From positions 1 through 64,000 of the IMG/VR virus record IMGVR_UViG_3300009093_000035: a stretch of DNA of 64,000 nt; one strand, 5' to 3'. The position numbers and the translations under genes were made by a program. Shown in pieces: positions 4,066 through 59,679 of the stretch (positions are counted from its first letter, which is position 1; each line of letters opens with the position of its first letter). The notes under the pieces were generated by a model, which worked only from the letters and a program-made list of their open reading frames with translations, did not search any database and had not been told where the DNA came from.

Positions 4066-4753
4066 ATGGAAAGCGTGATCGTAGAGATTCGAGCTGGAGA
4101 AGGCGGAGATGACGCGAAGCTTCTGGTGAAGGAGCAGTTCGTTGTGTATGTGCGCCTGATCGAGCGGAGGGGTCTTTGACTGCTTCATCGTAGACGAGCG
4201 CCCCGGCTTCCTCTCGTTCCAAGTGAGCGGGAAGGTGGCACGCTCGACCTTCTCTCAGGAATCCGGAGGGCACCGCTGGCAGCGCGTACCTCCGAACGAG
4301 AAGAGGGGACGAGTCCAGACCTCGACCGTCACTGTAGCGGTCCTCGACGAACCGAAGGAGTCGGAGCTTCGGATCGAGGAGAGAGACATCGAGTGGCAGA
4401 CCTGTCGCGGTAGCGGAGCCGGTGGTCAGCACCGGAACGTCACCAACTCGGCCGTCCAGATGACCCACCTCCCTACCGGGATCCGAGTCCGCGTCGAGAA
4501 CGAGCGCTCCCAGCACCAGAACCGAGAGACAGCCCTCCGGGTCCTACGAGCCCGCGTACACGAAGCGCGGACGTCGGCGGCTACCTCGGCTCGGGAAGAC
4601 TCCCGACGGGCGCAGGTGGGCTCGGGGATGCGAGGGGACAAGGTCCGGACGATCCGCGCTCAGGACGGCCAAGTCACGGACCACCGACCGAACGGCGGTC
4701 AGATCCGGTACAAGGACTACATCCGCGGGAACTGGGAAGGCCTTCTGAGATAA
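4066..4753 (+). CDS. class I peptide chain release factor-like protein (RF1-like, no domain 1), expressed through a programmed +1 frameshift, 228 aa
   Basis: ORF1 4066-4179 (MESVIVEIRAGEGGDDAKLL...RRGL*) has a GGAGG RBS. The +1 frame from GAC 4178 continues DCFIVDERPG...ESGGHRWQRVPPNEKRGRVQTSTVTVAV...SGAGGQHRN...THLPTG...ERSQHQN to TAA 4751-4753. Confidence 0.92.
4166..4180 (+). promoter_or_regulatory. prfB-type +1 ribosomal frameshift cassette (internal SD, 3-nt spacer, CTT TGA C)
   Basis: GGAGG (4166-4170), GGT, CTT (4174-4176), TGA (4177-4179), C. Same geometry as the RF2 AGGGGG-UAU-CUU-UGA-C site. Confidence 0.9.
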
Positions 4754-4757
4754 GGAA

Positions 4758-5876
4758 TCAGGGCGTAGTCCCCACCCAGCCGCAGTACTGAGGGTAGATC
4801 GCGGCTGCCATGGCCGGCCCCTCGCTCGCGTTTGGGTGTAGACCGTCCGACTTCGCCAACGTCATCCCAGCGAACGTATGGTCTGCGATCACATTCTGAC
4901 CGCCGCTGACCGCCGTCGCGATCACGCCGGGGAGGTAATTTGCGTTCCAGTCAAGCACTTGAGCCGTAATCGGCGCACTCGCCGAGTACTGGAGCAGGTC
5001 CATCGCGATGACCTTGGCTTGCGGCATCTTGCTCTTGATGTCCGCCAACAAGGCTGCGTATCTCACGGCCAGCTGAGCGTTCGTCTGGCCGTCGCTCACT
5101 ATGTCATTGATGCCGATCAGAAGCGGAATGACGTCCGGGACGAAACGAGTACCGAACGCATACGTCGCCGAATCGAGATTCGCCTGTAGCGTGACGGTCG
5201 TTAGGCCACCACCGGCCAAACAACGATCTCTCGCGAAGGGTGTGAACGCTGGCTTCAGCGGTCCGACAGGACGAAACGGAGCGCCTCCGTCGGGCCGCGC
5301 GTCGATTGTGGCTTGAGTAAGACCGCGCCACTGAGCGATGTTGCCGGCTTGGGCGGTAATCGAATCGCCCATGAAGCAGACTTCTTTCGCCCCAGCGTAG
5401 CTGCTCGTCCCCCACTTCGTAGCGACGTACGCCTTAGCCTGAGATAGCTCCGTAGGAGAGGGCGCCGTCTTGCGCATGAAGATACAACCGAGCGCGACGT
5501 TAGCGCAAACCGTGCCGGTGTATCCTGCACCGACGAAACCCGTGTTGGTCAGCGCTGAGAGTACAGATGGCGTGCCAGTGTGTTCCTTATCGTTGTCGAC
5601 GCTGACGTAGGCTACGCCGCCGACGATACGGCAATGCACAGCGTACGATCGACCGTCTGCGTAGAGCGGGGCGAAGCCGGTAATGCCATAGGGCGTCGAG
5701 CCCGTACCGAGGTCGGCGCCAGACTGAGTCACCTGAACCATGTACGGTGCGGCGCTGCCGGCGCTAACGATGCCGGGGGAGCTGTAGTACGAGGTCGGGG
5801 TGGGGTCGGCGGGAAGCGCGACCGGCGTCACGACGACGATCCACCAACCCTCTGTAGTGGTTACGACAGAGGAGGC
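4758..5876 (-). CDS. 3' part of SGNH/GDSL esterase tail-associated protein B (5' end lies inside the inverted segment; 453 aa when reconstituted)
   Basis: FMGDSIT, LLIGIND and SDGLHP catalytic blocks. The frame reads ASSVVTTTEGWWIVVVTP from the junction at 5876. Confidence 0.8.
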   Translation of the reverse strand, partial: ASSVVTTTEGWWIVVVTPVALPADPTPTSYYSSPGIVSAGSAAPYMVQVTQSGADLGTGSTPYGITGFAPLYADGRSYAVHCRIVGGVAYVSVDNDKEHTGTPSVLSALTNTGFVGAGYTGTVCANVALGCIFMRKTAPSPTELSQAKAYVATKWGTSSYAGAKEVCFMGDSITAQAGNIAQWRGLTQATIDARPDGGAPFRPVGPLKPAFTPFARDRCLAGGGLTTVTLQANLDSATYAFGTRFVPDVIPLLIGINDIVSDGQTNAQLAVRYAALLADIKSKMPQAKVIAMDLLQYSASAPITAQVLDWNANYLPGVIATAVSGGQNVIADHTFAGMTLAKSDGLHPNASEGPAMAAAIYPQYCGWVGTTP

Positions 5877-6199
5877 AGCGGAGCCGACATCGCTATCGGA
5901 AACGCCCGCTTCGCCGATATCCCCTCTTGGGTTGCGGCGGCTTGAAGGACTGACCCATGGGTTTTCGAGCTTCTCAGGCGGGAGGGAGGTCCAGAGGACT
6001 AGCGTCTCTGGATATCCTCAATCCTCAGCGTCTTCAAGATGAGCGTGGTATCACTATCAGCTCATGGCCCAATAACGGTAGTGCGGGCGGATCTAGCGCT
6101 CAGGGAACTGCGGCCAACCAGCCCACCGTCACTACTATCGGCGGCAAGGCTGCGCTCCTTTTCGACGGCAGCAACGACGTACTGGCCGACTCGTTCGCT
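5877..6199. other. 323-bp inverted segment carrying the 3' end of gene A and the 5' end of gene B
   Basis: The + strand encodes GADIAIGNARFADIPSWVAAA* (to 5945) and MGFRASQAGGR...FDGSNDVLADSFA (5957-6199) between minus-strand genes. Ends are AGCG (5877-5880) and CGCT (6196-6199); flipping restores both frames. Confidence 0.85.
5957..6199 (+). CDS. N-terminal 81 aa of SGNH tail protein B, in inverted orientation
   Basis: AAGGA RBS. MGFRASQAGGRS parallels gene A MPFRAAISGGRA. SSWPNNG...QGTAANQPT...LLFDGSND is typical tail lectin-like sequence. Confidence 0.75.
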
Positions 6200-7987
6200 C
6201 GGCTGAGACGGGTGGATCTGATCGCCCAGGAAGGTGATGAACGGGGAGATGTCGGCGGGGGTCGTACTACGAACGGCCTTGAACCCGGCGTTGTGGAGAG
6301 CCGTAACGATAGCCGGGTGACCCGCGTTGACCGCCGCGAAAGTAGCCGCGTTGGGGGAACCCGGGCAGATGTACAGGTCGTCTACGACGAACAGGGCCGT
6401 CGGGAAGAGGGCCGCCAGAGCCAACATGAAGGTCTGTTTGTCGGCGAGAACCGTCGCTGCTGAGTGACCGCTGACGATGACGTCATTCGTACCGATGTTG
6501 ACGATGATCACCAGCTTGCGGCGACCAACGGACCAGTCTCCCGGAAGGGCGCCCCACGAAGACCCGCTGAGGTACGTCGTGAGAGAAGAGATCGCGTTGC
6601 CGTTGTGGGCGAAGCACAGGTCCTGAGGGAAAGCGATCGCCGCCTCCGAAAGGGGTCCCACGGCATTGTAGATACGACCCGACACGGGTCCAGCGTCGAA
6701 GAGACCCTGGAGGTACTTCCTCCACTGGGCGATGTTGGCGGTACCCGAGCCGCCCGACGTGATCGAGTCTCCCCACCACATGAAGTCCACGGCGGAGGGG
6801 GTCGATACCGTCACGGACGGGATACCGATGGGTCCGATCCCGCGAGGATCCACCCGGCAATCGGCCTCATTCCCCGAACTTCCGTAGACGCCTCCGAGAC
6901 CGATGTTCGTAGCGGTCCAGGTCCACGGAGTTCCGGCGCTACCCGCGACTCCATTGACGCTTACGATCGCCGTAGCGGGATTCCAAGCAACCACCCCTAG
7001 GAGAGCGTGGAACGTGAAGACGAGGTACCCGCTGGCCGCCTTCACGGTTCCGCCCTGAACGGCCTCGATTCGAACGCCCGTCCCGTCGTGTCGGAAACGG
7101 ATACCGTTGTTCGCGTCGTCGAACGTGACGAGCCAACGGATATCCCCGCTGAACATCTCAGTAGAGGCGAAGTTCGGAGAGACCTGGTAGAACTGAGCGG
7201 CCTTCGAGAGAATCAGGGGGTTGAAGGTAGAGACCGGCGCGACGTCTCGTCCTCGCGGATGACCCGCGGTCCCGTATTGGTTGGTGTTGCGGATCGCGCT
7301 CGTGGGATAGTTCCCCGGCTCGCTGCTCACGAAGTCGTAGACGCCGTCTCGAACGCCTGCGGTGAGACCACCGTGCCCACTCAGGTCATCGTTCTCCGAG
7401 AGCATCATCTGGGACTCGCCGCCGTTCGCGGCTACGCGAACCCGGTAACGACGCCACGTCTCGGTAAGGACGGTTTCACCCTGGCTGGTCTGATTCCCCG
7501 CGGGACCGCCGGTGTACAGATTGATACAGGCCGGACCCGTACCTCCGATACTAGCTCTCGCCCAGGCGCTTCCAGCCATTGGGGCGCTGAGAGCCGCCAC
7601 GTTTACGTTCTGGCGCCAACGGAGAGTCGCGTCCCCAGCAGTCTGAACGCGAGTAGCCTTTCGACCATCCGGGCCTTCCACGTAAGAGCCCGTGACCGTA
7701 ACGCCACCTTGGTTCGACCAAGGCGATAGAGTGATGTCACGGGAGTGACCCGTTTGACTGGTCGTACCGCGTTCGAGGAGTAGCATCTTCCCTGCCCCGT
7801 CGTTCCGGTCTTCATACCGGGGAACGTTGGACGCGGCGAAGTCCATGAACGAAGTGGACACGCCCGTAGAAGGCGAGGTCGTCAGGAACGTACCCTCAGT
7901 GGTACGTGTGAAGGGGATCTGAGAGAAATCCACGAACGGTGTCGGGGTCGACGCCCGTCCTCCACTAATGGCTGCTCTGAAAGGCAT
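6062..7987 (-). CDS. SGNH/GDSL esterase tail-associated protein A (last ~44 aa derive from the inverted segment; 618 aa when reconstituted)
   Basis: N-terminal phage spike-like region (FTRTTEGT...PRYED...LLLE), then WGDSIT, IVNIGTND and GDQIHP. Confidence 0.8.
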   Translation of the reverse strand: MPFRAAISGGRASTPTPFVDFSQIPFTRTTEGTFLTTSPSTGVSTSFMDFAASNVPRYEDRNDGAGKMLLLERGTTSQTGHSRDITLSPWSNQGGVTVTGSYVEGPDGRKATRVQTAGDATLRWRQNVNVAALSAPMAGSAWARASIGGTGPACINLYTGGPAGNQTSQGETVLTETWRRYRVRVAANGGESQMMLSENDDLSGHGGLTAGVRDGVYDFVSSEPGNYPTSAIRNTNQYGTAGHPRGRDVAPVSTFNPLILSKAAQFYQVSPNFASTEMFSGDIRWLVTFDDANNGIRFRHDGTGVRIEAVQGGTVKAASGYLVFTFHALLGVVAWNPATAIVSVNGVAGSAGTPWTWTATNIGLGGVYGSSGNEADCRVDPRGIGPIGIPSVTVSTPSAVDFMWWGDSITSGGSGTANIAQWRKYLQGLFDAGPVSGRIYNAVGPLSEAAIAFPQDLCFAHNGNAISSLTTYLSGSSWGALPGDWSVGRRKLVIIVNIGTNDVIVSGHSAATVLADKQTFMLALAALFPTALFVVDDLYICPGSPNAATFAAVNAGHPAIVTALHNAGFKAVRSTTPADISPFITFLGDQIHPSQPSERVGQYVVAAVEKERSLAADSSDGGLVGRSSLSARSARTTVIGP

Positions 7988-8032
7988 CTAGTCCCCTCTG
8001 ACAGCTTGAAAGAGTTTCCGGGGGGGTGCCAT
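7988..8032 (-). CDS. 14-aa mini-ORF MAPPRKLFQAVRGD, in frame with gene A and separated from it by a single TAG
   Basis: Truncated copy of the MA(P/S)PRKLFQA leader of 8068-8538 and 33102-34541. TAG (7990-7988) is directly followed by ATG (7987). Confidence 0.55.
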   Translation of the reverse strand: MAPPRKLFQAVRGD

Positions 8033-8067
8033 ACCCCATACGGGCCTCTATAAGGAAATCAGACGGA

Positions 8068-8538
8068 TCACAGTACCCAAATTGTCGCAGCGAATGTCCC
8101 GATCGTATCTTCTCCTGAGAAGACGGTCGTAAGCGTCACTTCCACACGAGGAGTTGAGAGACCTTCTCCGCTGAAGACCGTAGCGGCGACCGTTGTACCC
8201 GCTGAATCGAAGATGGGAGGGCTCGTAACCTGATATGGCTTCGAGGTGTCGTAGAGCATCCCGTTCGGGAGAGTGAAGACGAACTCCCCGACTCCACCTT
8301 TCCCTCCAGTCAAGGTGAGGGCAACAACGCCCGAGATCGTCAGATACTTGCCGACCTGGAGGTAGCTCCACAACTCGACCGGATCGAGCGCGGAAACGAC
8401 TCCGCTGGCGCCGGAGAGAACGGGCGTGTACGTACCGGCCGTAGCCCCGCCCTCGTCCACCCCGAGGGCGCCGATCGCAGCCCGAGCGCTCTGTTGAGTC
8501 GCACCGATAGCCTGAAAGAGTTTCCGAGGTGGCGCCAT
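8068..8538 (-). CDS. tail fibre-like protein with MAPPRKLFQAIGATQQSAR leader
   Basis: Leader shared with 33102. C-terminus GTYTPVL...YLQVGKYLTISG...FTLP resembles fibre tip domains. Confidence 0.65.
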   Translation of the reverse strand: MAPPRKLFQAIGATQQSARAAIGALGVDEGGATAGTYTPVLSGASGVVSALDPVELWSYLQVGKYLTISGVVALTLTGGKGGVGEFVFTLPNGMLYDTSKPYQVTSPPIFDSAGTTVAATVFSGEGLSTPRVEVTLTTVFSGEDTIGTFAATIWVL

Positions 8539-53024: not shown

Positions 53025-53360
53025 CTACGGGCTCTGGGGCGTAGGAGGCGTCGGGGACGGGGGGAGGGCCGGAAGAAGGTTCTTCAGGATCATCTCCCAA
53101 AGACCCACGGCCGAGGCTCCCGCAGTGAAGCCCTTCCCGAGAGCCTCTTCCCACGGGATCCCCGTAGCGAGCTGAACGCCGATCGAGGAGAGGATTCCGA
53201 GCCCCGCGGCGACCCACGGCACGTACTTCGCCCCGACCTTGTTCTGGAGGCCGAAACGGTTCGCGATGTAGACCGCGAGACTGATCCCGAGACCCACGGC
53301 GAGAGGCCACTGGTGGTCAGCGAGAGCCGAGATGAAGGCTACCAGCGAATCGGTGTTCAT
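53025..53360 (-). CDS. holin-like membrane protein
   Basis: Three hydrophobic segments; follows the large structural gene. Confidence 0.55.
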   Translation of the reverse strand: MNTDSLVAFISALADHQWPLAVGLGISLAVYIANRFGLQNKVGAKYVPWVAAGLGILSSIGVQLATGIPWEEALGKGFTAGASAVGLWEMILKNLLPALPPSPTPPTPQSP

Positions 53361-53364
53361 GGGG

Positions 53365-56300
53365 TCACTCCTTGAAGAACGGAGCCGGCTGAAGAGCCGG
53401 ATCCGGAGTCGTCCGGGTACGCCCGCGATCCATCGGACGACCTTCGAGAAGGTATCGATCCGCCGCCGCGTAGCCCTCGCCGTAGCCGGTCGGAGAGATC
53501 TGACCCGCCGCCGTGACGCCCGTCGCCTGAGTGTTCCCGTTGCCGTAGACGGCGAAGGTCATGATGACCATCTGAAGCTCGTCGCCTTCGGAACGGATTC
53601 GGTTCGGGGCCGCTCCGGAGAACGCCTCCTCGTGGAAGTTACGAACGAGGAGCGCCTTCCCAGCGAGGACCGCCCCCTTCAGGACGGGCCGGAGGCTAGA
53701 CGGGAAGGAGTCGCTCACCCAATCCACCGGGCCGCCCGGGGCCGAACCCGAGAGAACGAACGCCGCGCCGCCGCCTCGGTAGAGACGGAACTTCTTCGTG
53801 CCCGCGGGGGTGAGGGTCGTGAACGGGGTGTACAGAAGGATCCCGCCGTCCGACATCGAGAGGAGCGATCCCGGGTCGTTCAAGAACCGGGTGTACTCCA
53901 AGCCTCCCGTCGTGAGGGGAAGGTCCGAGTAGATCGGACGAACGCCTCCCGGATAGGTCCGCATCGCCGACGCGTTGTCGTCAAGCGGGTTCTCCGAGAA
54001 GAAGTCCGAGTCGCTCGCGAGGATACCCAGCGGAAGGCGCTCGGTCATGCCTCCGAGCGAGATCGCCGAGTTCCCCGGGCCGCCGTTCACCGGAAGGTTG
54101 ACGCCGCCTGCGAAGGGACCTTCGGTGACGACGGCTCCGACCGGGTGGTTGTTGCTCGACGGGTAGAGGCCGAGCCCCGTTCCATCGAGGAGTTGAGCCG
54201 CCTGGTTCAGCGGGACGAACGGCACCGGAGCCGTCCCGTACGACATCGTGATACGGGTCGAGTTGCCGTCTTCTCCGACCTCTCGCGAGACGAAGATCAC
54301 GCGGTCGGCCAAGGCGAACGCTTCGACGAAGAGGCTGGTCGTGGGATCCGAGTTGACGGCCTCGGCCAACGACGCGGCCAGGTCGAGGGTGTTGGCGCCG
54401 ATGAAGTCGGCGCCTCCGACGAACGTCACCGAGATCACGGTCTGGATCTCGATCGAGAGAGCCCCGGTGACTCCGTTGATCAGGTTGGCGTTCGTGAGCT
54501 GGATCGAGATCCCGGCTCGCGACGTGTTCTTTCCCTGACCTTCGGTGAAGGCTCGCGGAAGGACGCGCCACGGGAGGGCCGAGGGAGAAGCCGGGATACG
54601 GTCCGCGGCTCCGGCCGTGGACGAGTCGATGTACCCGGCGTCCAGCTCGGTTCCGAGGAACATCCGGCCACCGATCTTCCCGGTCCCGAGCGTCGTGTAG
54701 AAGTCCATCGACGCGACGACCTGGAGAGCGCGCGGGTTCGGACGCTGGACGTTCATCACACCCGTCGTCGGATCGAACTGCTCGATCGGAGTCGCGAGCT
54801 GGAACGCGTCGTTCTGACTGATCTGGCCGTAGCGCGACTCGTAGTCCGCGATCTGGATCGTCGATCCGTCTCGCGTCATGTACGGGTCGCCCTGATAGAC
54901 CGTCCGCTCGTACGCCTGGTACAGGGCATCCCCTCGCGGAGCCGCGCACGGAAGAACCATGCTGACGTCCGTGATCTCGGGGTTGCTCCCGTCCACGATG
55001 TCCGCTCCGGTTCCCGTGTTGCGACGGGCGAGGACGAGGTTGTTCTGGTTGATCCAGCCCTCGGAGAACCCGAAGACCACGCACTCCACGACGTAGTTGA
55101 AGCTCGTGAAGGTGTTGCCCGAGACGAAGCCCGGGACGCGAGTGATGTCGATCGCGGACTCAGGGACGAGGTACGTGTGAGCGTTCGCCGTTCCCGTGAC
55201 GTCGTTTCCTCCGCCCTGACGGACGAAGAGCGTCTGCTGATCGGCTCCCGTACGAAGAAGGTTCGTCGGTGGGTTCACGATCGGAGTGAGACGGTCACCT
55301 TGGAACCCGCCGATGTACGTGGGATCGAGGTGGGCCAGGAAGTCCTGGAGTTCGTAGACGCCGTAGAGGCGCGCGATCCCGAGGTACGGGGGAAGCTCGA
55401 CGCCGTTCAGACCATTCCCGAGGTCCGACGAGATCACGTCTGAGTAGAACTGTTTCCGCCCGCCGTACGCCGGATGCGGCGGACCGCCAACTGTGCCCCG
55501 GTGTCCGTAGGGGATACCAGCGCCCGTCGCAAAGAGGATAGGGTTGACCCGGTTGGCCGCGGGGGACCCGCCGTTGTCTTCACCGCCGATGATGTAGAAG
55601 ACTTCCGACGTGTCATCAGTCTCGTCGCAAAAGAGGTGGTTGATTCCGGGCATGAACGGATCCGTCGGAGCCGTTCGAACGTGGTAGGGGATGTCCTGAC
55701 GACCGAAGCGGGGCATGTACTCCGGCGGAACCGGGTAGCCCATCTTGAGGCCCGTCGTGAAGATCGCCGCCCCGTCCTTCAAGGTGGCGTCGAGGTAGGC
55801 GACCGGGCCGAGGAGCGACGGGTTCGCCGTCGTCGTCAGCGCCTTCTCCGTCATGTTCTTCTTGATGAAGGGACGGAAGAGAGCCGTCTTCGAGCCCGGA
55901 TCCACGAACAGTTCGTGCTCCCGGTCCTGTTCCGAACGCCCGACGACGAAACCGCCGTAGGCCGGAGCCAGCGGAGCGTCCTCGCCCTTCGACGAAAGAC
56001 GGTTCCAGAGCTGGATGTGGGTGGGGTCGTACTCGCGCTCTCCCGCCGGGAAGGGGGCGAGCGTCGAGAACTCCGGATCGAGAACCGAGGGGACGTTGCG
56101 GAGGAACGTCGCCGCGCTCGCCACGGCCGAGAATCGGACGATCTCGTCCGCCACACGGGTACTCGAACCCCGGTTCGGGTGCCACATCAGCGTCGAGGTG
56201 ATGACGGCCTTCGAGTTGACCGGAACGACCTTCGCCGGAGAGCCCGTCTGCTGAACCGCCAGCGTCCCGGTGTTCGCAGCGTTCCACGGGTTCGCCGCGC

Positions 56301-58869
56301 CGCCGGAGATGTTCGCGAGGTCGGTGAAGACGAGCGCCGCGCCGGCCGGTCCAGGGATACGACCCTTGTCGTCCTCGGCGTTCATGAACATGGAGCGGAA
56401 CTCCACGATCACGGTCTGACCCGCGTTGCTGGTGAACGCGTTGAAGTCGGCCGAGAGCGGGACGACAACCATCTGGTCCGCCGTATCCGCGATCTGATCC
56501 GTGTACGCCCCGCCCGTAGCGGCTGCCGTACCGGCCCCTACGACCTTGAAGGCGCCGTTGTTGTCCTTGGACAAGGCGTTCCCGTACACGATGACGTAGA
56601 TGAGCGAGGAGGCTCCGGTGTGGTCCCGGCCCCCGTCCGTCAGCATGTCACGAAGCGTCCGCTCCCCGCGGAGAAGCGGAAGCGTGAACGTATCGAAGTT
56701 CAGCCCGAGAACCTTGATCTGGTGACGGGTATCCGGGCCGGTCGGGTTGATGAAGTTCGCGCTCGTGGAAGGCACCGCCGTGAAGACGAGCGCCGGGTTG
56801 AGAACCCCTCCGAGAACGATGAAGGGACGCTCGAAGTTGAGCGAGTGGAGCGGGTACATCGCTCCCGGGTGCTGGGCGGGGGTCTCCCCGATCGCCGCCG
56901 CCGTCGTGATACGACCGGCTCGGAAGGCGTTGTCCAGGGGCGAGCCCGGGACCGGAAGCGGGAAGGTCGGGGCGTAGGTCGGACCGCCCTCGAAGCGGAG
57001 CTTCCAGGGGTGCTGGTCTCCGGGATTCGAGGTATCCGACAGCCACATCTCCACCGGCGAGACGTGACGGACGGCCTGGGGGTTCGGGCTCTGGGGGAAG
57101 CCCGCGCGCGCCCCGCCCACCCCATCAGCTCCGCCGAGGTGGATGAGGATCACGGACCCGTTCGTCCAACCGTCGCCGGTCGGGTTGTTCAGGAAGCCGT
57201 TCGGCTGGAAGTCCGCCCCGACGCCCCAGCTCGCCGCCACGCTCGAATCGAACGTGGTGTCGGCGAAACCGTTCGTGGTAGGAGCGTTCGGGTCGATCAT
57301 GACCGTCACGCCCGGCTGAAGGGCCGCGCTGTCCGACCAGATCGTCCGGATACCGTCTGGACCGTCGATCTGATCGACCTGATTCGGAGGCGGGCTCGTG
57401 TTGACACCCCAGAGGTACGAGACCTCCGTGGTGGTGACGCCGAACGTATCGCCGCCCGTCCCGGCCTTCTTGAAGGTCGTCTTCAGGTCGCCGCGAACGA
57501 GCGAGGCGACGCCGTGCTGGAGGATACGGGTGTAGTCCCAATCCCCAAAGTTCACCGATCGACGAAGGTCGACGATGTCGTCTCGGGTGATCTGGTCGGC
57601 GAAGACTCCGTCCGGACGCGAGTCGTAGAGGGAGACGACGGTTCCTGCGACGTGAACCCGGGCCATCGTCCCGTTGCGGCCGCGCCCCCCGGTGACTCCG
57701 GGACCGGGCGTCGGAACGAAGATCGTGTTGACCGAATCCGTCCCGTTGAAGGCGATGATCTCTTGGTTGATACCGGTGTCGAGGACGAGGAACCTCGTCG
57801 TGACACCGACCGGGAAGAGGGCCGGATCCGAAAGGGCCGAACCAACGAGGTTCGTGAGGACGATCGGACCCGTCTGGGTTGCGGTGATGTCGCTCGTGAG
57901 CGTCGCTTGGAGAAGCGGGCGAGCCCCCGAACGCGGATCGGGAAGCGTATGGGAACTCGGAGTCCGCTCCGAGGCGCCGTTCTGATTCGGGTTGCCGCTG
58001 GAGGTGACCGCCACGAAGGGGCTCGTGTTCCGGCGGAAGACGCCCGCGATCGGAATCGCATAGACGTAGCCGTCGATCGTTCCGAGGCCGTTCGCCGGAT
58101 CACCGTCGCCTGCGCGCCAGAGCGAAGGATCGCCCAGCTCTTCTCTCATGTTCCCGAACGTGAAGGCGGAGGACACCGTGGCCGTCCCCTGAGCCTTCAC
58201 CTGCGGGTCGTCGAGACCGTCCGGGTAGTTGGCGAGATCGACGCTCGTTCCGAGCGAGTCGCCCGAGCCCACGACGCGGATACGGTATTGAAGCTGGACG
58301 CGCTTCGTCGTCTCGAAGCCGATCGCCGGATCTTCGAGATCGTCGGTGACGTTCGTCCCGCCGAACTCCACGTTGCCGTACTTCCAGATCGTGGAAGCCG
58401 AGGGCTTGTTCACCGTGGAAGGGTTGGGAGAGACGAGGGTCCGCCAGACTTCCAGGAAGACGAAGTCCGTACGGGAATCCGTCGTCGGAGGCGGGAAGAG
58501 AGCGACGCGGTTGAGGACGCTGTCGGAGATCCTTGTCCCGGCCACCGGGAAGACCCAGCCGTTCACCGCCGCGATCAGAACAGGGGAAAGCTCCTCGACC
58601 GAATCCACGACTCCGGGAACGCCGATTCCGAACTGGTTCGCCCAGAGCGGGTCGACCTGGTAGTCTTCCCTAGCGCGCGTCGGATCGACGAAGAAGCCCG
58701 AATGGACCTGGGCTCGAACGACCTGAGAGAGATTCTCCCAGTCGATCTGAGACATCAGGTTCAGCTCAGAGTCGAGGGGTGGCTTGTCCTTCTGCCACAC
58801 GACGGCCGTGAACTGACGTGCGAAGTCAGACAACGTTCGGGAAACTCCGGGACCCCAGTACTCAGCCAT
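53365..58869 (-). CDS. very large virion structural protein (baseplate/tail-associated), 1834 aa
   Basis: VVWQKDKPPLDSELN, RTDFVFLEVW, ETTKRVQLQYRIRV, IDGYVYAIP...FRRN and RPDG...D.I...DI.DLR, as in jumbo-phage baseplate-type proteins. Confidence 0.7.
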   Translation of the reverse strand: MAEYWGPGVSRTLSDFARQFTAVVWQKDKPPLDSELNLMSQIDWENLSQVVRAQVHSGFFVDPTRAREDYQVDPLWANQFGIGVPGVVDSVEELSPVLIAAVNGWVFPVAGTRISDSVLNRVALFPPPTTDSRTDFVFLEVWRTLVSPNPSTVNKPSASTIWKYGNVEFGGTNVTDDLEDPAIGFETTKRVQLQYRIRVVGSGDSLGTSVDLANYPDGLDDPQVKAQGTATVSSAFTFGNMREELGDPSLWRAGDGDPANGLGTIDGYVYAIPIAGVFRRNTSPFVAVTSSGNPNQNGASERTPSSHTLPDPRSGARPLLQATLTSDITATQTGPIVLTNLVGSALSDPALFPVGVTTRFLVLDTGINQEIIAFNGTDSVNTIFVPTPGPGVTGGRGRNGTMARVHVAGTVVSLYDSRPDGVFADQITRDDIVDLRRSVNFGDWDYTRILQHGVASLVRGDLKTTFKKAGTGGDTFGVTTTEVSYLWGVNTSPPPNQVDQIDGPDGIRTIWSDSAALQPGVTVMIDPNAPTTNGFADTTFDSSVAASWGVGADFQPNGFLNNPTGDGWTNGSVILIHLGGADGVGGARAGFPQSPNPQAVRHVSPVEMWLSDTSNPGDQHPWKLRFEGGPTYAPTFPLPVPGSPLDNAFRAGRITTAAAIGETPAQHPGAMYPLHSLNFERPFIVLGGVLNPALVFTAVPSTSANFINPTGPDTRHQIKVLGLNFDTFTLPLLRGERTLRDMLTDGGRDHTGASSLIYVIVYGNALSKDNNGAFKVVGAGTAAATGGAYTDQIADTADQMVVVPLSADFNAFTSNAGQTVIVEFRSMFMNAEDDKGRIPGPAGAALVFTDLANISGGAANPWNAANTGTLAVQQTGSPAKVVPVNSKAVITSTLMWHPNRGSSTRVADEIVRFSAVASAATFLRNVPSVLDPEFSTLAPFPAGEREYDPTHIQLWNRLSSKGEDAPLAPAYGGFVVGRSEQDREHELFVDPGSKTALFRPFIKKNMTEKALTTTANPSLLGPVAYLDATLKDGAAIFTTGLKMGYPVPPEYMPRFGRQDIPYHVRTAPTDPFMPGINHLFCDETDDTSEVFYIIGGEDNGGSPAANRVNPILFATGAGIPYGHRGTVGGPPHPAYGGRKQFYSDVISSDLGNGLNGVELPPYLGIARLYGVYELQDFLAHLDPTYIGGFQGDRLTPIVNPPTNLLRTGADQQTLFVRQGGGNDVTGTANAHTYLVPESAIDITRVPGFVSGNTFTSFNYVVECVVFGFSEGWINQNNLVLARRNTGTGADIVDGSNPEITDVSMVLPCAAPRGDALYQAYERTVYQGDPYMTRDGSTIQIADYESRYGQISQNDAFQLATPIEQFDPTTGVMNVQRPNPRALQVVASMDFYTTLGTGKIGGRMFLGTELDAGYIDSSTAGAADRIPASPSALPWRVLPRAFTEGQGKNTSRAGISIQLTNANLINGVTGALSIEIQTVISVTFVGGADFIGANTLDLAASLAEAVNSDPTTSLFVEAFALADRVIFVSREVGEDGNSTRITMSYGTAPVPFVPLNQAAQLLDGTGLGLYPSSNNHPVGAVVTEGPFAGGVNLPVNGGPGNSAISLGGMTERLPLGILASDSDFFSENPLDDNASAMRTYPGGVRPIYSDLPLTTGGLEYTRFLNDPGSLLSMSDGGILLYTPFTTLTPAGTKKFRLYRGGGAAFVLSGSAPGGPVDWVSDSFPSSLRPVLKGAVLAGKALLVRNFHEEAFSGAAPNRIRSEGDELQMVIMTFAVYGNGNTQATGVTAAGQISPTGYGEGYAAADRYLLEGRPMDRGRTRTTPDPALQPAPFFKE

Positions 58870-58875
58870 GAGTTC

Positions 58876-59679
58876 TCACTTGTACAGAACCGCGTAAGAG
58901 GCGAGGTAACGCTTCTCGACGGTCGATTTGTTGATGAAGGCCAAACGGAGCTTCGTTCCTGGGTCGCAGACAGTCATCGGAGTCAAAAGGCTCACCCGAG
59001 AGTACCCGCCCCCGTCGTTGGCCGAGAGGTAGACTTCCCAATCGGTTGGAGATTGATCCACTTCGACGAGCCCCTTCGAAGCAGCGTCGTTCGCTCCGGC
59101 GCTCGGCCCGTCGTATGCCATGACGTCCGGAGTGACCACGTACTCGTGGATCTTCCAGTACACCATGAAGCTATCCGAACCGGCAGGGACGTCGGTTGAG
59201 ATGTCGATCGTATCCGTGATGAGGCACCCAGGGCGAACCGGGCTGAGCGTGGAGTTCTGAGGAAGAACCGCCACCGAGTTCGGAGCCAGGCCCTGGTTCA
59301 AGACTCCGCCCCGCCCGACCTGGGCCCGAGTCGTGTACCTCACTGGCGGAGGTCCCGGGCTCGCCGGGAAGGCCGCCGTCAGGTCCAAAGCATCCACATC
59401 CGCCGACGTCAGAAGAGCGTTGTAACGGATGAAGTTGTAGGACGGGAACGACTTCAGCACTGAAGCGAAGACGGCGTCTACAAGGTTGGACGGACCCAAG
59501 AGCTTCGAGCTGATGGTGATCGGAGGAGGAAACACCCCCTCCGGAACTTCCACATAGAACTTGCCGTTCGATGGGATCGGAGGCGACCCCGGAAGAGGCG
59601 TCGGAGAAACCTGTACGATCACCGATGTGGACTCGGGTCCAACGTTCGGGAGTCGATTCAGGTCGGCGAAGATCCTCAT
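58876..59679 (-). CDS. virion structural protein (putative)
   Basis: Co-transcribed with 53365; C-terminal WEVYLSANDG...LRLAF. Confidence 0.55.
   Translation of the reverse strand: MRIFADLNRLPNVGPESTSVIVQVSPTPLPGSPPIPSNGKFYVEVPEGVFPPPITISSKLLGPSNLVDAVFASVLKSFPSYNFIRYNALLTSADVDALDLTAAFPASPGPPPVRYTTRAQVGRGGVLNQGLAPNSVAVLPQNSTLSPVRPGCLITDTIDISTDVPAGSDSFMVYWKIHEYVVTPDVMAYDGPSAGANDAASKGLVEVDQSPTDWEVYLSANDGGGYSRVSLLTPMTVCDPGTKLRLAFINKSTVEKRYLASYAVLYK

What the first reader, a model, noticed from the sequence alone, without database searches (positions are those of the whole stretch)
5877..6199. 323-bp inversion across two tandem SGNH tail genes; flipping it restores both frames exactly
Seen: between minus-strand genes the + strand carries a gene end, RBS and gene start. 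Inverting at the 4-bp AGCG (5877-80)/CGCT (6196-99) overlap gives gene A ...GDQIHPSQPS-GADIAIGNARFADIPSWVAAA* (618 aa; tail parallels gene B HPN...WV). It also gives gene B MGFRASQAGGR...FDGSNDVLADSFA-ASSVVTTTEGWW... (453 aa), with no base lost or gained. As assembled, B loses its RBS and first 81 aa, while A stays open with an alternative ~44-aa C-terminus right after the catalytic His. No long inverted repeats and no invertase are visible. Inference: a possible phase switch for receptor-modifying esterases (host range) using a very short crossover core, unlike Gin/Cin systems. Alternatives are a one-off rearrangement or an amplification/assembly artefact.
Basis: partly seen in the sequence, partly recalled or inferred. 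Interest (0 to 1): 0.85.

Follow-up and report, generated by a model that had tools for sequence, protein, structure and literature searches.

The report
One-off inversion breaking two phage esterase genes
A 323-base stretch between two neighbouring sugar-esterase genes of an uncultivated giant phage really is flipped, and a sister contig carries it unflipped, but the evidence points to one accidental rearrangement that broke a gene, not a reusable switch.

Summary
Inverting 5877-6199 gives gene A of 618 aa and gene B of 453 aa. Both restored proteins line up with their families across the junctions.

A natural 4,011-bp contig, L004, carries exactly this restored arrangement with the same breakpoints. 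Three assemblies of the ~249-kb phage carry the inverted form. It is therefore real, not an assembly artefact.

Nothing supports a programmed switch:
- The inverted repeat is 4 bp, and only 3 of 4 in L004 and by inference the ancestor.
- No longer repeat sits at the ends.
- None of 72 window ORFs is a recombinase.
- The flipped state removes B's ribosome-binding site, start codon and 81 conserved residues.
- Orientation follows lineage. L004 keeps the imperfect core, so it never flipped.
- No minority-orientation fragments exist in the databases.

Best reading (about 0.8): one conservative illegitimate inversion at a 4-bp microhomology. It knocked out B and replaced A's terminal helix in one lineage of a soil-type jumbo phage. 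A reversible switch remains at about 0.1. Read mapping would settle it.

The parts
5877..6199 (.). The inverted 323-bp segment. Relative to the ancestral order it is reverse-complemented.
   Evidence: L004 aligns 6199->5878 at 100%; plus-strand coding island 5861-6206.
5877..5880 (+). Left crossover core, AGCG.
6196..6199 (+). Right crossover core, CGCT. The unflipped relative L004 has CGCC here (Gly597 instead of Ser597), as does the 81% relative P0009 at protein level.
6200..7987 (-). Body of gene A (residues 1-596). It has N-terminal beta-sandwich (ConA/CBM-like) domains plus an SGNH esterase domain with GDS, GxND and DxxH blocks.
6062..6199 (-). Present 3' end of A as assembled: Ser597 plus 44 residues read from the antisense of B's 5' end, then a stop.
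   Evidence: AF2 gives a helix at 597-619 at pLDDT about 54-64, then disorder.
5877..5945 (+). Ancestral last 22 codons and stop of A (the terminal helix GADIAIGNARFADIPSWVAAA), now on the wrong strand.
   Evidence: Helix 406-424 in the model of P0008.
5946..5956 (+). Ancestral 11-nt A-B spacer with a purine-rich Shine-Dalgarno-like AGGA, now on the wrong strand.
   Evidence: In L004, A's stop and B's start are 11 nt apart.
5957..6199 (+). Ancestral first 81 codons of B (start of the LamG/ConA-like domain), now on the wrong strand. It holds 15 family-invariant positions.
4758..5876 (-). Remainder of gene B (residues 82-453): the rest of the LamG-like domain plus the SGNH esterase domain. It is left without a ribosome-binding site or start codon. 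The first in-frame start is GTG at 5831.
6199..7568 (.). Tract in which the window differs from L004 at 25 sites (1.8%, 23 synonymous). It starts at the right breakpoint. Flanks 4280-6198 and 7569-8290 have 1 and 0 differences.

Best explanation
The ancestral locus was two co-directional genes on the minus strand, A (618 aa) then B (453 aa), 11 nt apart. Each combines carbohydrate-binding-type beta-sandwich domain(s) with a C-terminal SGNH/GDSL esterase domain. They are probably surface-glycan deacetylases used at the virion-host interface.

In the lineage sampled by this window, one non-programmed reciprocal exchange at a 4-bp inverted microhomology (AGCG/CGCY) flipped the 323 bp spanning the A-B boundary.

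Shown consequences:
- B lost its ribosome-binding site, start codon and first 81 residues.
- A lost its conserved terminal helix and now ends in 44 antisense-derived residues.

Inferred consequences:
- B is off.
- A is impaired or at best altered.
- The lineage is nevertheless viable and abundant, since it assembles as ~249-kb contigs.

Mechanism (inferred). I favour a conservative break-and-rejoin across a 4-nt stagger, the geometry of type-IIA topoisomerase cleavage (gyrase-type illegitimate recombination), at roughly 0.45 of the total. Starting from the unflipped CGCC allele, it reproduces the window base for base, including Ser597. The divergent tract would then be a later homologous import that stopped where collinearity ends.

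The main sub-alternative, at roughly 0.3, is a replicative double template switch during co-infection with a 1.8%-divergent relative. That explains the inversion, the tract and T6199 in one event.
For: - Restored order in natural contig L004 with identical breakpoints.
- Restored proteins are collinear with their families across the junctions.
- The inverted order is present in the window/L003, in L002 and in ENA contig L005. L002 and L005 are identical over the ~13 kb fetched and differ from the window by only 2 SNPs over the shared 11.8 kb.
- Only 4 bp of inverted homology at the ends. The other short repeats nearby are no more than chance would give.
- Microhomology of 4 bp or more occurs at 2.2% of random breakpoint pairs in this window. 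It is therefore enriched, but far below any recombinase site.
- No recombinase, resolvase, integrase or transposase Pfam hit in 72 ORFs of the window.
- L004 and P0009 carry Gly597, which is CGCC in L004's DNA. A simulated 4-nt staggered exchange on that ancestor gives a daughter identical to the window. A 3-bp join leaves one mismatch at 6199.
- L004 keeps the imperfect core, so it is not a revertant.
- SNP density jumps at the right breakpoint: 1 in 1,919 bp against 25 in 2,092 bp, binomial p about 1e-6. P(no SNP in the segment at tract density) is 0.003.
- No other antisense-coding island embedded in genes in 64 kb.
- No junction fragments or further contigs in the databases.
- Gyrase subunit exchange is an accepted route to illegitimate recombination (PMC11164529).
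Against: - Reversibility cannot be excluded without reads.
- The exchange was perfectly conservative and hit putative host-range genes, the classic targets of phage invertible segments.
- A stays open after the flip, and AF2 still draws a helix there, at lower confidence.
- Only 26% of the genome was screened for recombinases or topoisomerases.
- T6199 could simply be the first SNP of the divergent tract, so the staggered-cut footprint is not unique evidence.
- Only one unflipped contig exists, so 'orientation follows lineage' rests on n = 1 against 3. The three inverted assemblies may share samples or reads.
Confidence: 0.8

Rival explanations
1. Programmed, reversible phase variation. An unidentified phage or host recombinase repeatedly flips the 323-bp segment at a 4-bp core. 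This toggles esterase B on and off and swaps A's terminal helix, to vary host range.
For: - Both orientations exist in nearly identical backgrounds. Gene B and the segment are 100% identical between L004 and L002.
- The exchange is base-perfect.
- The location is in putative receptor-modifying genes.
- The size is similar to known small switches.
- A's alternative tail is open and modelled as a helix.
Against: - The inverted repeat is 4 bp (3 of 4 in the unflipped lineage). There is no extended or palindromic site.
- No recombinase in 64 kb.
- The flipped state offers no alternative B, only a decapitated one.
- L004's imperfect core shows it never flipped.
- All large assemblies share one orientation, and no minority-junction fragments are on record.
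- The divergent tract ends at the breakpoint, as expected if the orientation difference was stable while strains recombined.
- No second such island in the window.
- Known intragenic invertons rely on longer repeats, for example 11 bp in thiC.
Confidence: 0.1
2. Assembly or amplification artefact. The segment is not inverted in the real phage DNA.
For: Chimeric amplification products often join inverted sequence at short microhomologies (general knowledge). The three inverted assemblies might derive from overlapping read sets. L002 and L005 are identical over 13 kb.
Against: - Both junctions of a clean reciprocal inversion are present.
- Different assembly pipelines agree: two JGI assemblies with different contig start points and lengths, and an ENA record named k141_4393677.
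- The window differs from the others by 2 SNPs, so at least two consensus populations carry it.
- A 4-bp repeat cannot mislead a de Bruijn assembler.
- The flipped lineage carries its own linked SNPs, starting at the breakpoint.
Confidence: 0.02
3. Same one-off event, different chemistry. A replication fork or recombination-dependent replication intermediate switched templates twice at the microhomology (MMBIR-like) while copying a co-infecting relative. This produced the inversion and the adjacent 1.37-kb divergent tract together.
For: - The divergent tract (25 SNPs, 23 synonymous) begins at the right breakpoint base 6199 and ends at 7568, with identical sequence on both outer sides.
- T6199 would simply be the donor's allele.
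- Both non-synonymous differences are derived in the window lineage relative to P0009.
Against: - It needs three template switches.
- Outgroup polarisation of the synonymous sites is uninformative: 14 of 25 match neither.
- The staggered-cut model explains T6199 without a donor.
- Tract-end coincidence is also expected if a later homologous import was stopped by the heterology.
Confidence: 0.3

Closest known systems
Spontaneous illegitimate inversion at short inverted microhomology (topoisomerase-II/gyrase subunit-exchange or template-switch rearrangements)
   Same: - There are only a few base pairs of homology at the ends, and no dedicated sites or enzyme.
- It is a single event fixed in one lineage, and it causes gene disruption.
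- The 4-nt overlap equals the stagger of type-IIA topoisomerase cleavage (established knowledge).
- Gyrase-mediated illegitimate recombination is reviewed in PMC11164529.
   Different: - The enzyme is not identified here.
- No topoisomerase gene was seen in the 64-kb window.
- The exchange is unusually clean (no loss or gain), and it coincides with the end of a recombination tract.
Phage host-range invertible segments: Mu G/Gin, P1 C/Cin, e14 P/Pin (serine invertases)
   Same: DNA inversion inside genes for virion proteins that meet the host surface. The junction lies within a coding sequence, so the C-terminus of a protein changes.
   Different: - Those have about 26-bp recombination sites, an adjacent invertase gene and an enhancer.
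- Their segments are kb-sized, and both orientations encode complete alternative C-termini.
- Here there are 4 bp, no invertase in 64 kb, and one orientation simply breaks gene B.
Intragenic and partially intergenic invertons of bacteria (Chanin et al., bioRxiv 10.1101/2023.03.11.532203; Milman et al., PMC9881135)
   Same: Small inversions with ends inside coding sequence that recode a protein end or truncate a gene. This is the same formal outcome as here: recoding of A and loss of B.
   Different: - Those are defined by flanking inverted repeats (for example 11 bp in thiC) and by both orientations coexisting in one population's reads.
- Neither condition is met or testable here.
fimS-type ON/OFF switch (314 bp, 9-bp repeats, FimB/FimE)
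   Same: Similar size. The net effect on B would be ON/OFF.
   Different: - fimS carries a promoter and lies outside coding sequence, with dedicated tyrosine recombinases next to it (general knowledge).
- Here there is no promoter-like or terminator-like signal above background, and the segment is made of two gene ends.
SGNH esterase receptor-binding / tail spike proteins of phages (Acinetobacter phage Aristophanes PMC8471582; Pectobacterium phage Possum PMC9569702; Klebsiella prophage SGNH enzymes PMC13123978)
   Same: An SGNH esterase domain fused to beta-sandwich or fibre-like N-terminal parts. Foldseek matches phage SGNH tail fibre and minor tail proteins and CE2/CE3 carbohydrate esterases.
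   Different: - No detectable sequence similarity to any cultured phage or PHROG family.
- Virion location is untested.
- The family is rare: 130 representatives at E<=1e-3 among 1.84 billion.

Membership tests
Programmed invertible element (inverton / phase-variable switch) | Flanking inverted repeats long enough to be recombinase sites (about 9-30 bp) | tested here: not met
   Only AGCG/CGCT (4 bp), and AGCG/CGCC in unflipped L004. No longer repeat is positioned at the ends.
Programmed invertible element (inverton / phase-variable switch) | A site-specific recombinase encoded nearby or in the genome | tested here: inconclusive
   No resolvase, integrase or transposase Pfam hit in 72 ORFs of the 64-kb window. 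The other ~185 kb of the genome was not available.
Programmed invertible element (inverton / phase-variable switch) | Both orientations coexist within one population or clone | not testable with these tools
   No reads were available. The proxies are negative: no minority-junction contigs or protein fragments.
Programmed invertible element (inverton / phase-variable switch) | Evidence of reversal (revertants) or recurrent flipping in relatives | tested here: not met
   The only unflipped genome keeps an imperfect core that a flip would have homogenised. Orientation co-varies with 25 linked SNPs.
Programmed invertible element (inverton / phase-variable switch) | Each orientation yields a meaningful product | tested here: not met
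   The flipped state removes B's RBS, start codon and 81 residues holding 15 invariant positions. A's new tail lacks the conserved IGxA...W.
SGNH/GDSL hydrolases | Blocks I (GDS), III (GxND) and V (DxxH) in order; family profile match | tested here: met
   - A has WWGDSIT, IGTND and GDQIH. B has FMGDSIT, IGIND and SDGLH.
- PF13472 scores 40.7 bits for B (cut-off 32.9). A is sub-threshold at 23.6-25.9 bits.
- A's fold matches CE3/CE2 esterases at E about 1e-6.
Phage tail fibre / receptor-binding proteins | Virion association or position in a tail module | tested here: inconclusive
   - Fold matches to SGNH tail fibre and minor tail proteins.
- Relative P0003 lies between large genes and an Amidase_2 lysin.
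- The window neighbours are methyltransferase, phosphatase, release factor and similar genes.
- No PHROG hit.

The most novel reading that the evidence does not exclude
The segment is a genuine reversible switch. An unrecognised enzyme (a phage- or host-encoded recombinase, or a topoisomerase-like activity) would operate it, needing only a 4-bp overlap. It would turn esterase B off and on and swap the last helix of esterase A, giving a soil jumbo phage heritable but reversible host-range states without classical recombination sites.
Probability: 0.08. Interest if true: 0.8.

Novelty: new member of a known kind. Interest (0 to 1): 0.3.

Why it matters
- It is a clean, fully reconstructed natural example of a small inversion remodelling two putative receptor-modifying enzymes in an uncultivated ~249-kb phage. 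Both the ancestral and derived alleles are preserved in public metagenomes.
- It shows that a 'restores both frames exactly' pattern is what any simple inversion gives. Such a pattern is not evidence for a switch.
- It gives a sharp test for revertants: a restored orientation that carries the homogenised core.
- If B and A act on host surface glycans, the flipped lineage is a natural double mutant. Its persistence says these enzymes are dispensable in at least some hosts.

Tried and rejected
- DNA and protein searches of cultured phages found nothing.
- The metagenome scan with restored B returned only the two large inverted contigs.
- The IMG/VR scan returned only the window's own contig.
- The scan of species-representative genomes found no relative.
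- A search for short protein fragments carrying B's N-terminus, as a sign of minority junction contigs, found none.
- Look-ups through neighbouring genes found no further contigs. One look-up (the release factor) was not on record.
- Sample identifiers are not mentioned in any searchable paper, so sample independence is unresolved.
- Relatives P0002, P0003 and P0009 have single genes in other contexts, so they say nothing about inversion elsewhere.
- Outgroup polarisation of the 25 SNPs was uninformative at synonymous sites.
- The AF2 comparison of the two A tails is only suggestive. The models are mediocre, with mean pLDDT 63-65.
- Rfam gave nothing at gathering threshold, and the promoter/terminator scan gave only background-level consensus matches.
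- I did not walk the remaining 185 kb. Each look-up would yield about 10 kb of new sequence.
- I did not run a brute-force search of all 4-bp-bounded inversions, because ORF length does not discriminate even the true case. I used a coding-strand model instead.

Full report
**Source.** The window is the first 64 kb of IMGVR_UViG_3300009093_000035, which is JGI contig Ga0105240_10000045 (248,579 bp). It has 59-66% G+C and no tRNA genes in the window. It has no nucleotide or protein match for this locus among 50,697 cultured phage records. The window encodes PolA, DnaB-like helicase, primase, UvrD, an SNF2 helicase, an M23 peptidase, MT-A70 and other genes typical of a large phage.

**Observation.** On the minus strand, gene A is 6062-7987 (641 aa). 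The next long ORF is 4758-5831 (357 aa, GTG start). Between them the plus strand carries a gene end, a purine-rich spacer and a gene start.

Reverse-complementing 5877-6199 changes nothing in length. The ends are AGCG and CGCT.

A 3-periodic Markov model trained on other genes of the window independently calls 5861-6206 plus-strand coding inside a minus-strand block. Its score is as high as for real genes. It finds no other such island embedded in genes in the 64 kb.

**The restored order is the ancestral, functional one.**
- Both genes have SGNH/GDSL esterase domains.
- B also has a LamG/ConA-like N-terminal domain.
- B's closest solved relatives are CE3 acetyl esterases.
- Five full-length relatives of B (35-39% identity) align from the N-terminus to the end of the restored protein. 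Invariant residues lie on both sides of residue 81/82, for example D70 and G71 before it and S83 and T87 after it.
- The A family conserves a terminal helix with IGxA...W after the DxxH histidine. The restored tail fits this and the present tail does not.
- An 81%-identical A homologue ends with the restored-type tail.

**Both orientations exist in nature.** The 90% clusters of the two window proteins each contain a member of the predicted restored length, on one 4,011-bp JGI contig. That contig, L004 (Ga0105238_10054601), has A's stop and B's start 11 nt apart. It aligns to the window as 4280-5880 forward, 6199-5878 inverted at 100% identity, and 6196-8290 forward.

The inverted order is present in the window, in Ga0207695_10000111 (249,771 bp, different start point) and in ENA k141_4393677. 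Those two contigs are identical over the ~13 kb fetched. They differ from the window by 2 SNPs over the shared 11.8 kb. This rules out an assembly artefact for practical purposes.

**Tests for a programmed switch.**
- No inverted repeat longer than the 4-bp core sits at the ends. The 8-9-nt repeats nearby are offset and are no more than a 700-nt region gives by chance.
- Neither site is internally palindromic, by direct reading.
- None of 72 ORFs of the window hits a recombinase, transposase or topoisomerase family.
- There is no promoter- or terminator-like signal above background.
- The flipped state does not offer an alternative B. It removes the ribosome-binding site, start codon and 81 residues.
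- No further contigs or fragments with either junction are on record.
- Known intragenic invertons are defined by longer repeats and by mixed orientations in reads.

**Fine structure.** Against the restored window, L004 has 1 difference in 4280-6198, 25 in 6199-7568 and none in 7569-8290. Of the 25, 23 are synonymous. The asymmetry is highly significant. At the tract's density the 322-bp segment should have carried about 6 differences (P of none = 0.003).

The first difference is in the core itself. L004 reads CGCC (Gly597), as does P0009 at protein level, while the window reads CGCT (Ser597). So the ancestor very likely had an imperfect 3-of-4 repeat.

I simulated a conservative exchange with a 4-nt stagger on that ancestor. 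After strand segregation one daughter is identical to the window over 5700-6400. A join confined to the 3-bp GCG leaves a mismatch at 6199.

Two things follow:
1. L004 has never flipped, because a flip homogenises the core. It is therefore not a revertant, and there is no evidence of reversal.
2. The data fit a staggered break-and-rejoin of the type-IIA topoisomerase geometry, with gyrase-mediated illegitimate recombination as the precedent (PMC11164529). The divergent tract would then be a later homologous import that stopped at the heterology.

Equally, T6199 may just be the first base of a tract copied from a co-infecting relative during a double template switch. I cannot separate these two. 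Both are one-off, non-programmed events.

**Consequences.** AlphaFold2 with shallow alignments gives mediocre models (mean pLDDT 63-65). The canonical terminal helix begins just after the junction (P0008 residues 406-424, pLDDT about 65-77). The as-is tail is also drawn as a helix (597-619, pLDDT about 54-64), followed by disorder. A may therefore retain some fold, but this is weak evidence.

Foldseek links A to CE2/CE3 carbohydrate esterases and CBM-type sandwiches. Among viral models it matches SGNH tail fibre and minor tail proteins. This supports, but does not prove, a virion-associated glycan deacetylase like the SGNH tailspikes of Acinetobacter, Pectobacterium and Klebsiella phages.

**Verdict.** The feature is real and was correctly described. 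The interpretation as a switch is not supported. The best reading is a single illegitimate inversion fixed in one lineage (0.8), with a reversible switch at about 0.1 and an artefact at about 0.02. Read mapping phased with the SNPs at 6199 and 6242 would decide.

Noticed in passing
window 4066-4753 (+): A phage-encoded class-I release factor lies in two frames. ORF1 (37 aa, PCRF-like) ends in ..CGGAGGGGTCTTTGAC. This resembles, from memory, the prfB +1 frameshift site: a Shine-Dalgarno-like run, then CUU UGA C. The +1 frame continues for 192 aa with GGQ.

The protein is RF1-like (E 2e-43 to RF1, 2e-24 to RF2). It lacks domain 1, and PPN stands where RF1 has the PxT codon-recognition motif. Frameshift use is inferred, not shown.
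   Followed up: partly
window 6199-7568 versus L004: A mosaic tract: 25 SNPs (1.8%, 23 synonymous) confined to the body of gene A, flanked by identical sequence and starting at the inversion breakpoint. It indicates recent homologous exchange among co-occurring strains of this phage.
   Followed up: yes
L005 (ENA ERZ27252312 k141_4393677): This contig is 472,929 bp, about 1.9 times the ~249-kb JGI contigs of the same phage. It may be a concatenated or two-strain assembly, or the JGI contigs may be incomplete.
   Followed up: no
window 5364: The only difference between the window and the other inverted assemblies inside gene B is a synonymous GAT/GAC change in the Asp codon of the catalytic GDS motif. 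It gives no power to judge whether the decapitated B is decaying.
   Followed up: yes
L002 11887-12141 (-), just beyond the window start: A Tad2-like (PF11195) gene, a family annotated as anti-Thoeris. Nearby are a GNAT acetyltransferase, a DUF7227 protein, a cytidylyltransferase-like protein, MT-A70 and a dual-specificity phosphatase.
   Followed up: no
P0013, P0015 (389 aa), P0014 (704 aa); L010 208-543: Some relatives of A end right after the beta-sandwich part and lack the SGNH domain, so the esterase is a swappable module. The 81% relative of A on L010 has no tandem B, and a SASA (sialate O-acetylesterase) domain gene lies upstream.
   Followed up: partly
window 7952-7987 (-) and 5957-5992 (+): A and B share a similar N-terminus (MPFRAAISGGRA and MGFRASQAGGRS). 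Relatives P0010 and P0019 begin similarly. This may be a common anchoring or attachment motif.
   Followed up: no
window 53332-59199: A 1,834-aa minus-strand ORF (53365-58869) overlaps two long plus-strand ORFs (703 and 1,241 aa). Codon-position G+C favours the minus-strand one. I did not check which is real by homology.
   Followed up: no
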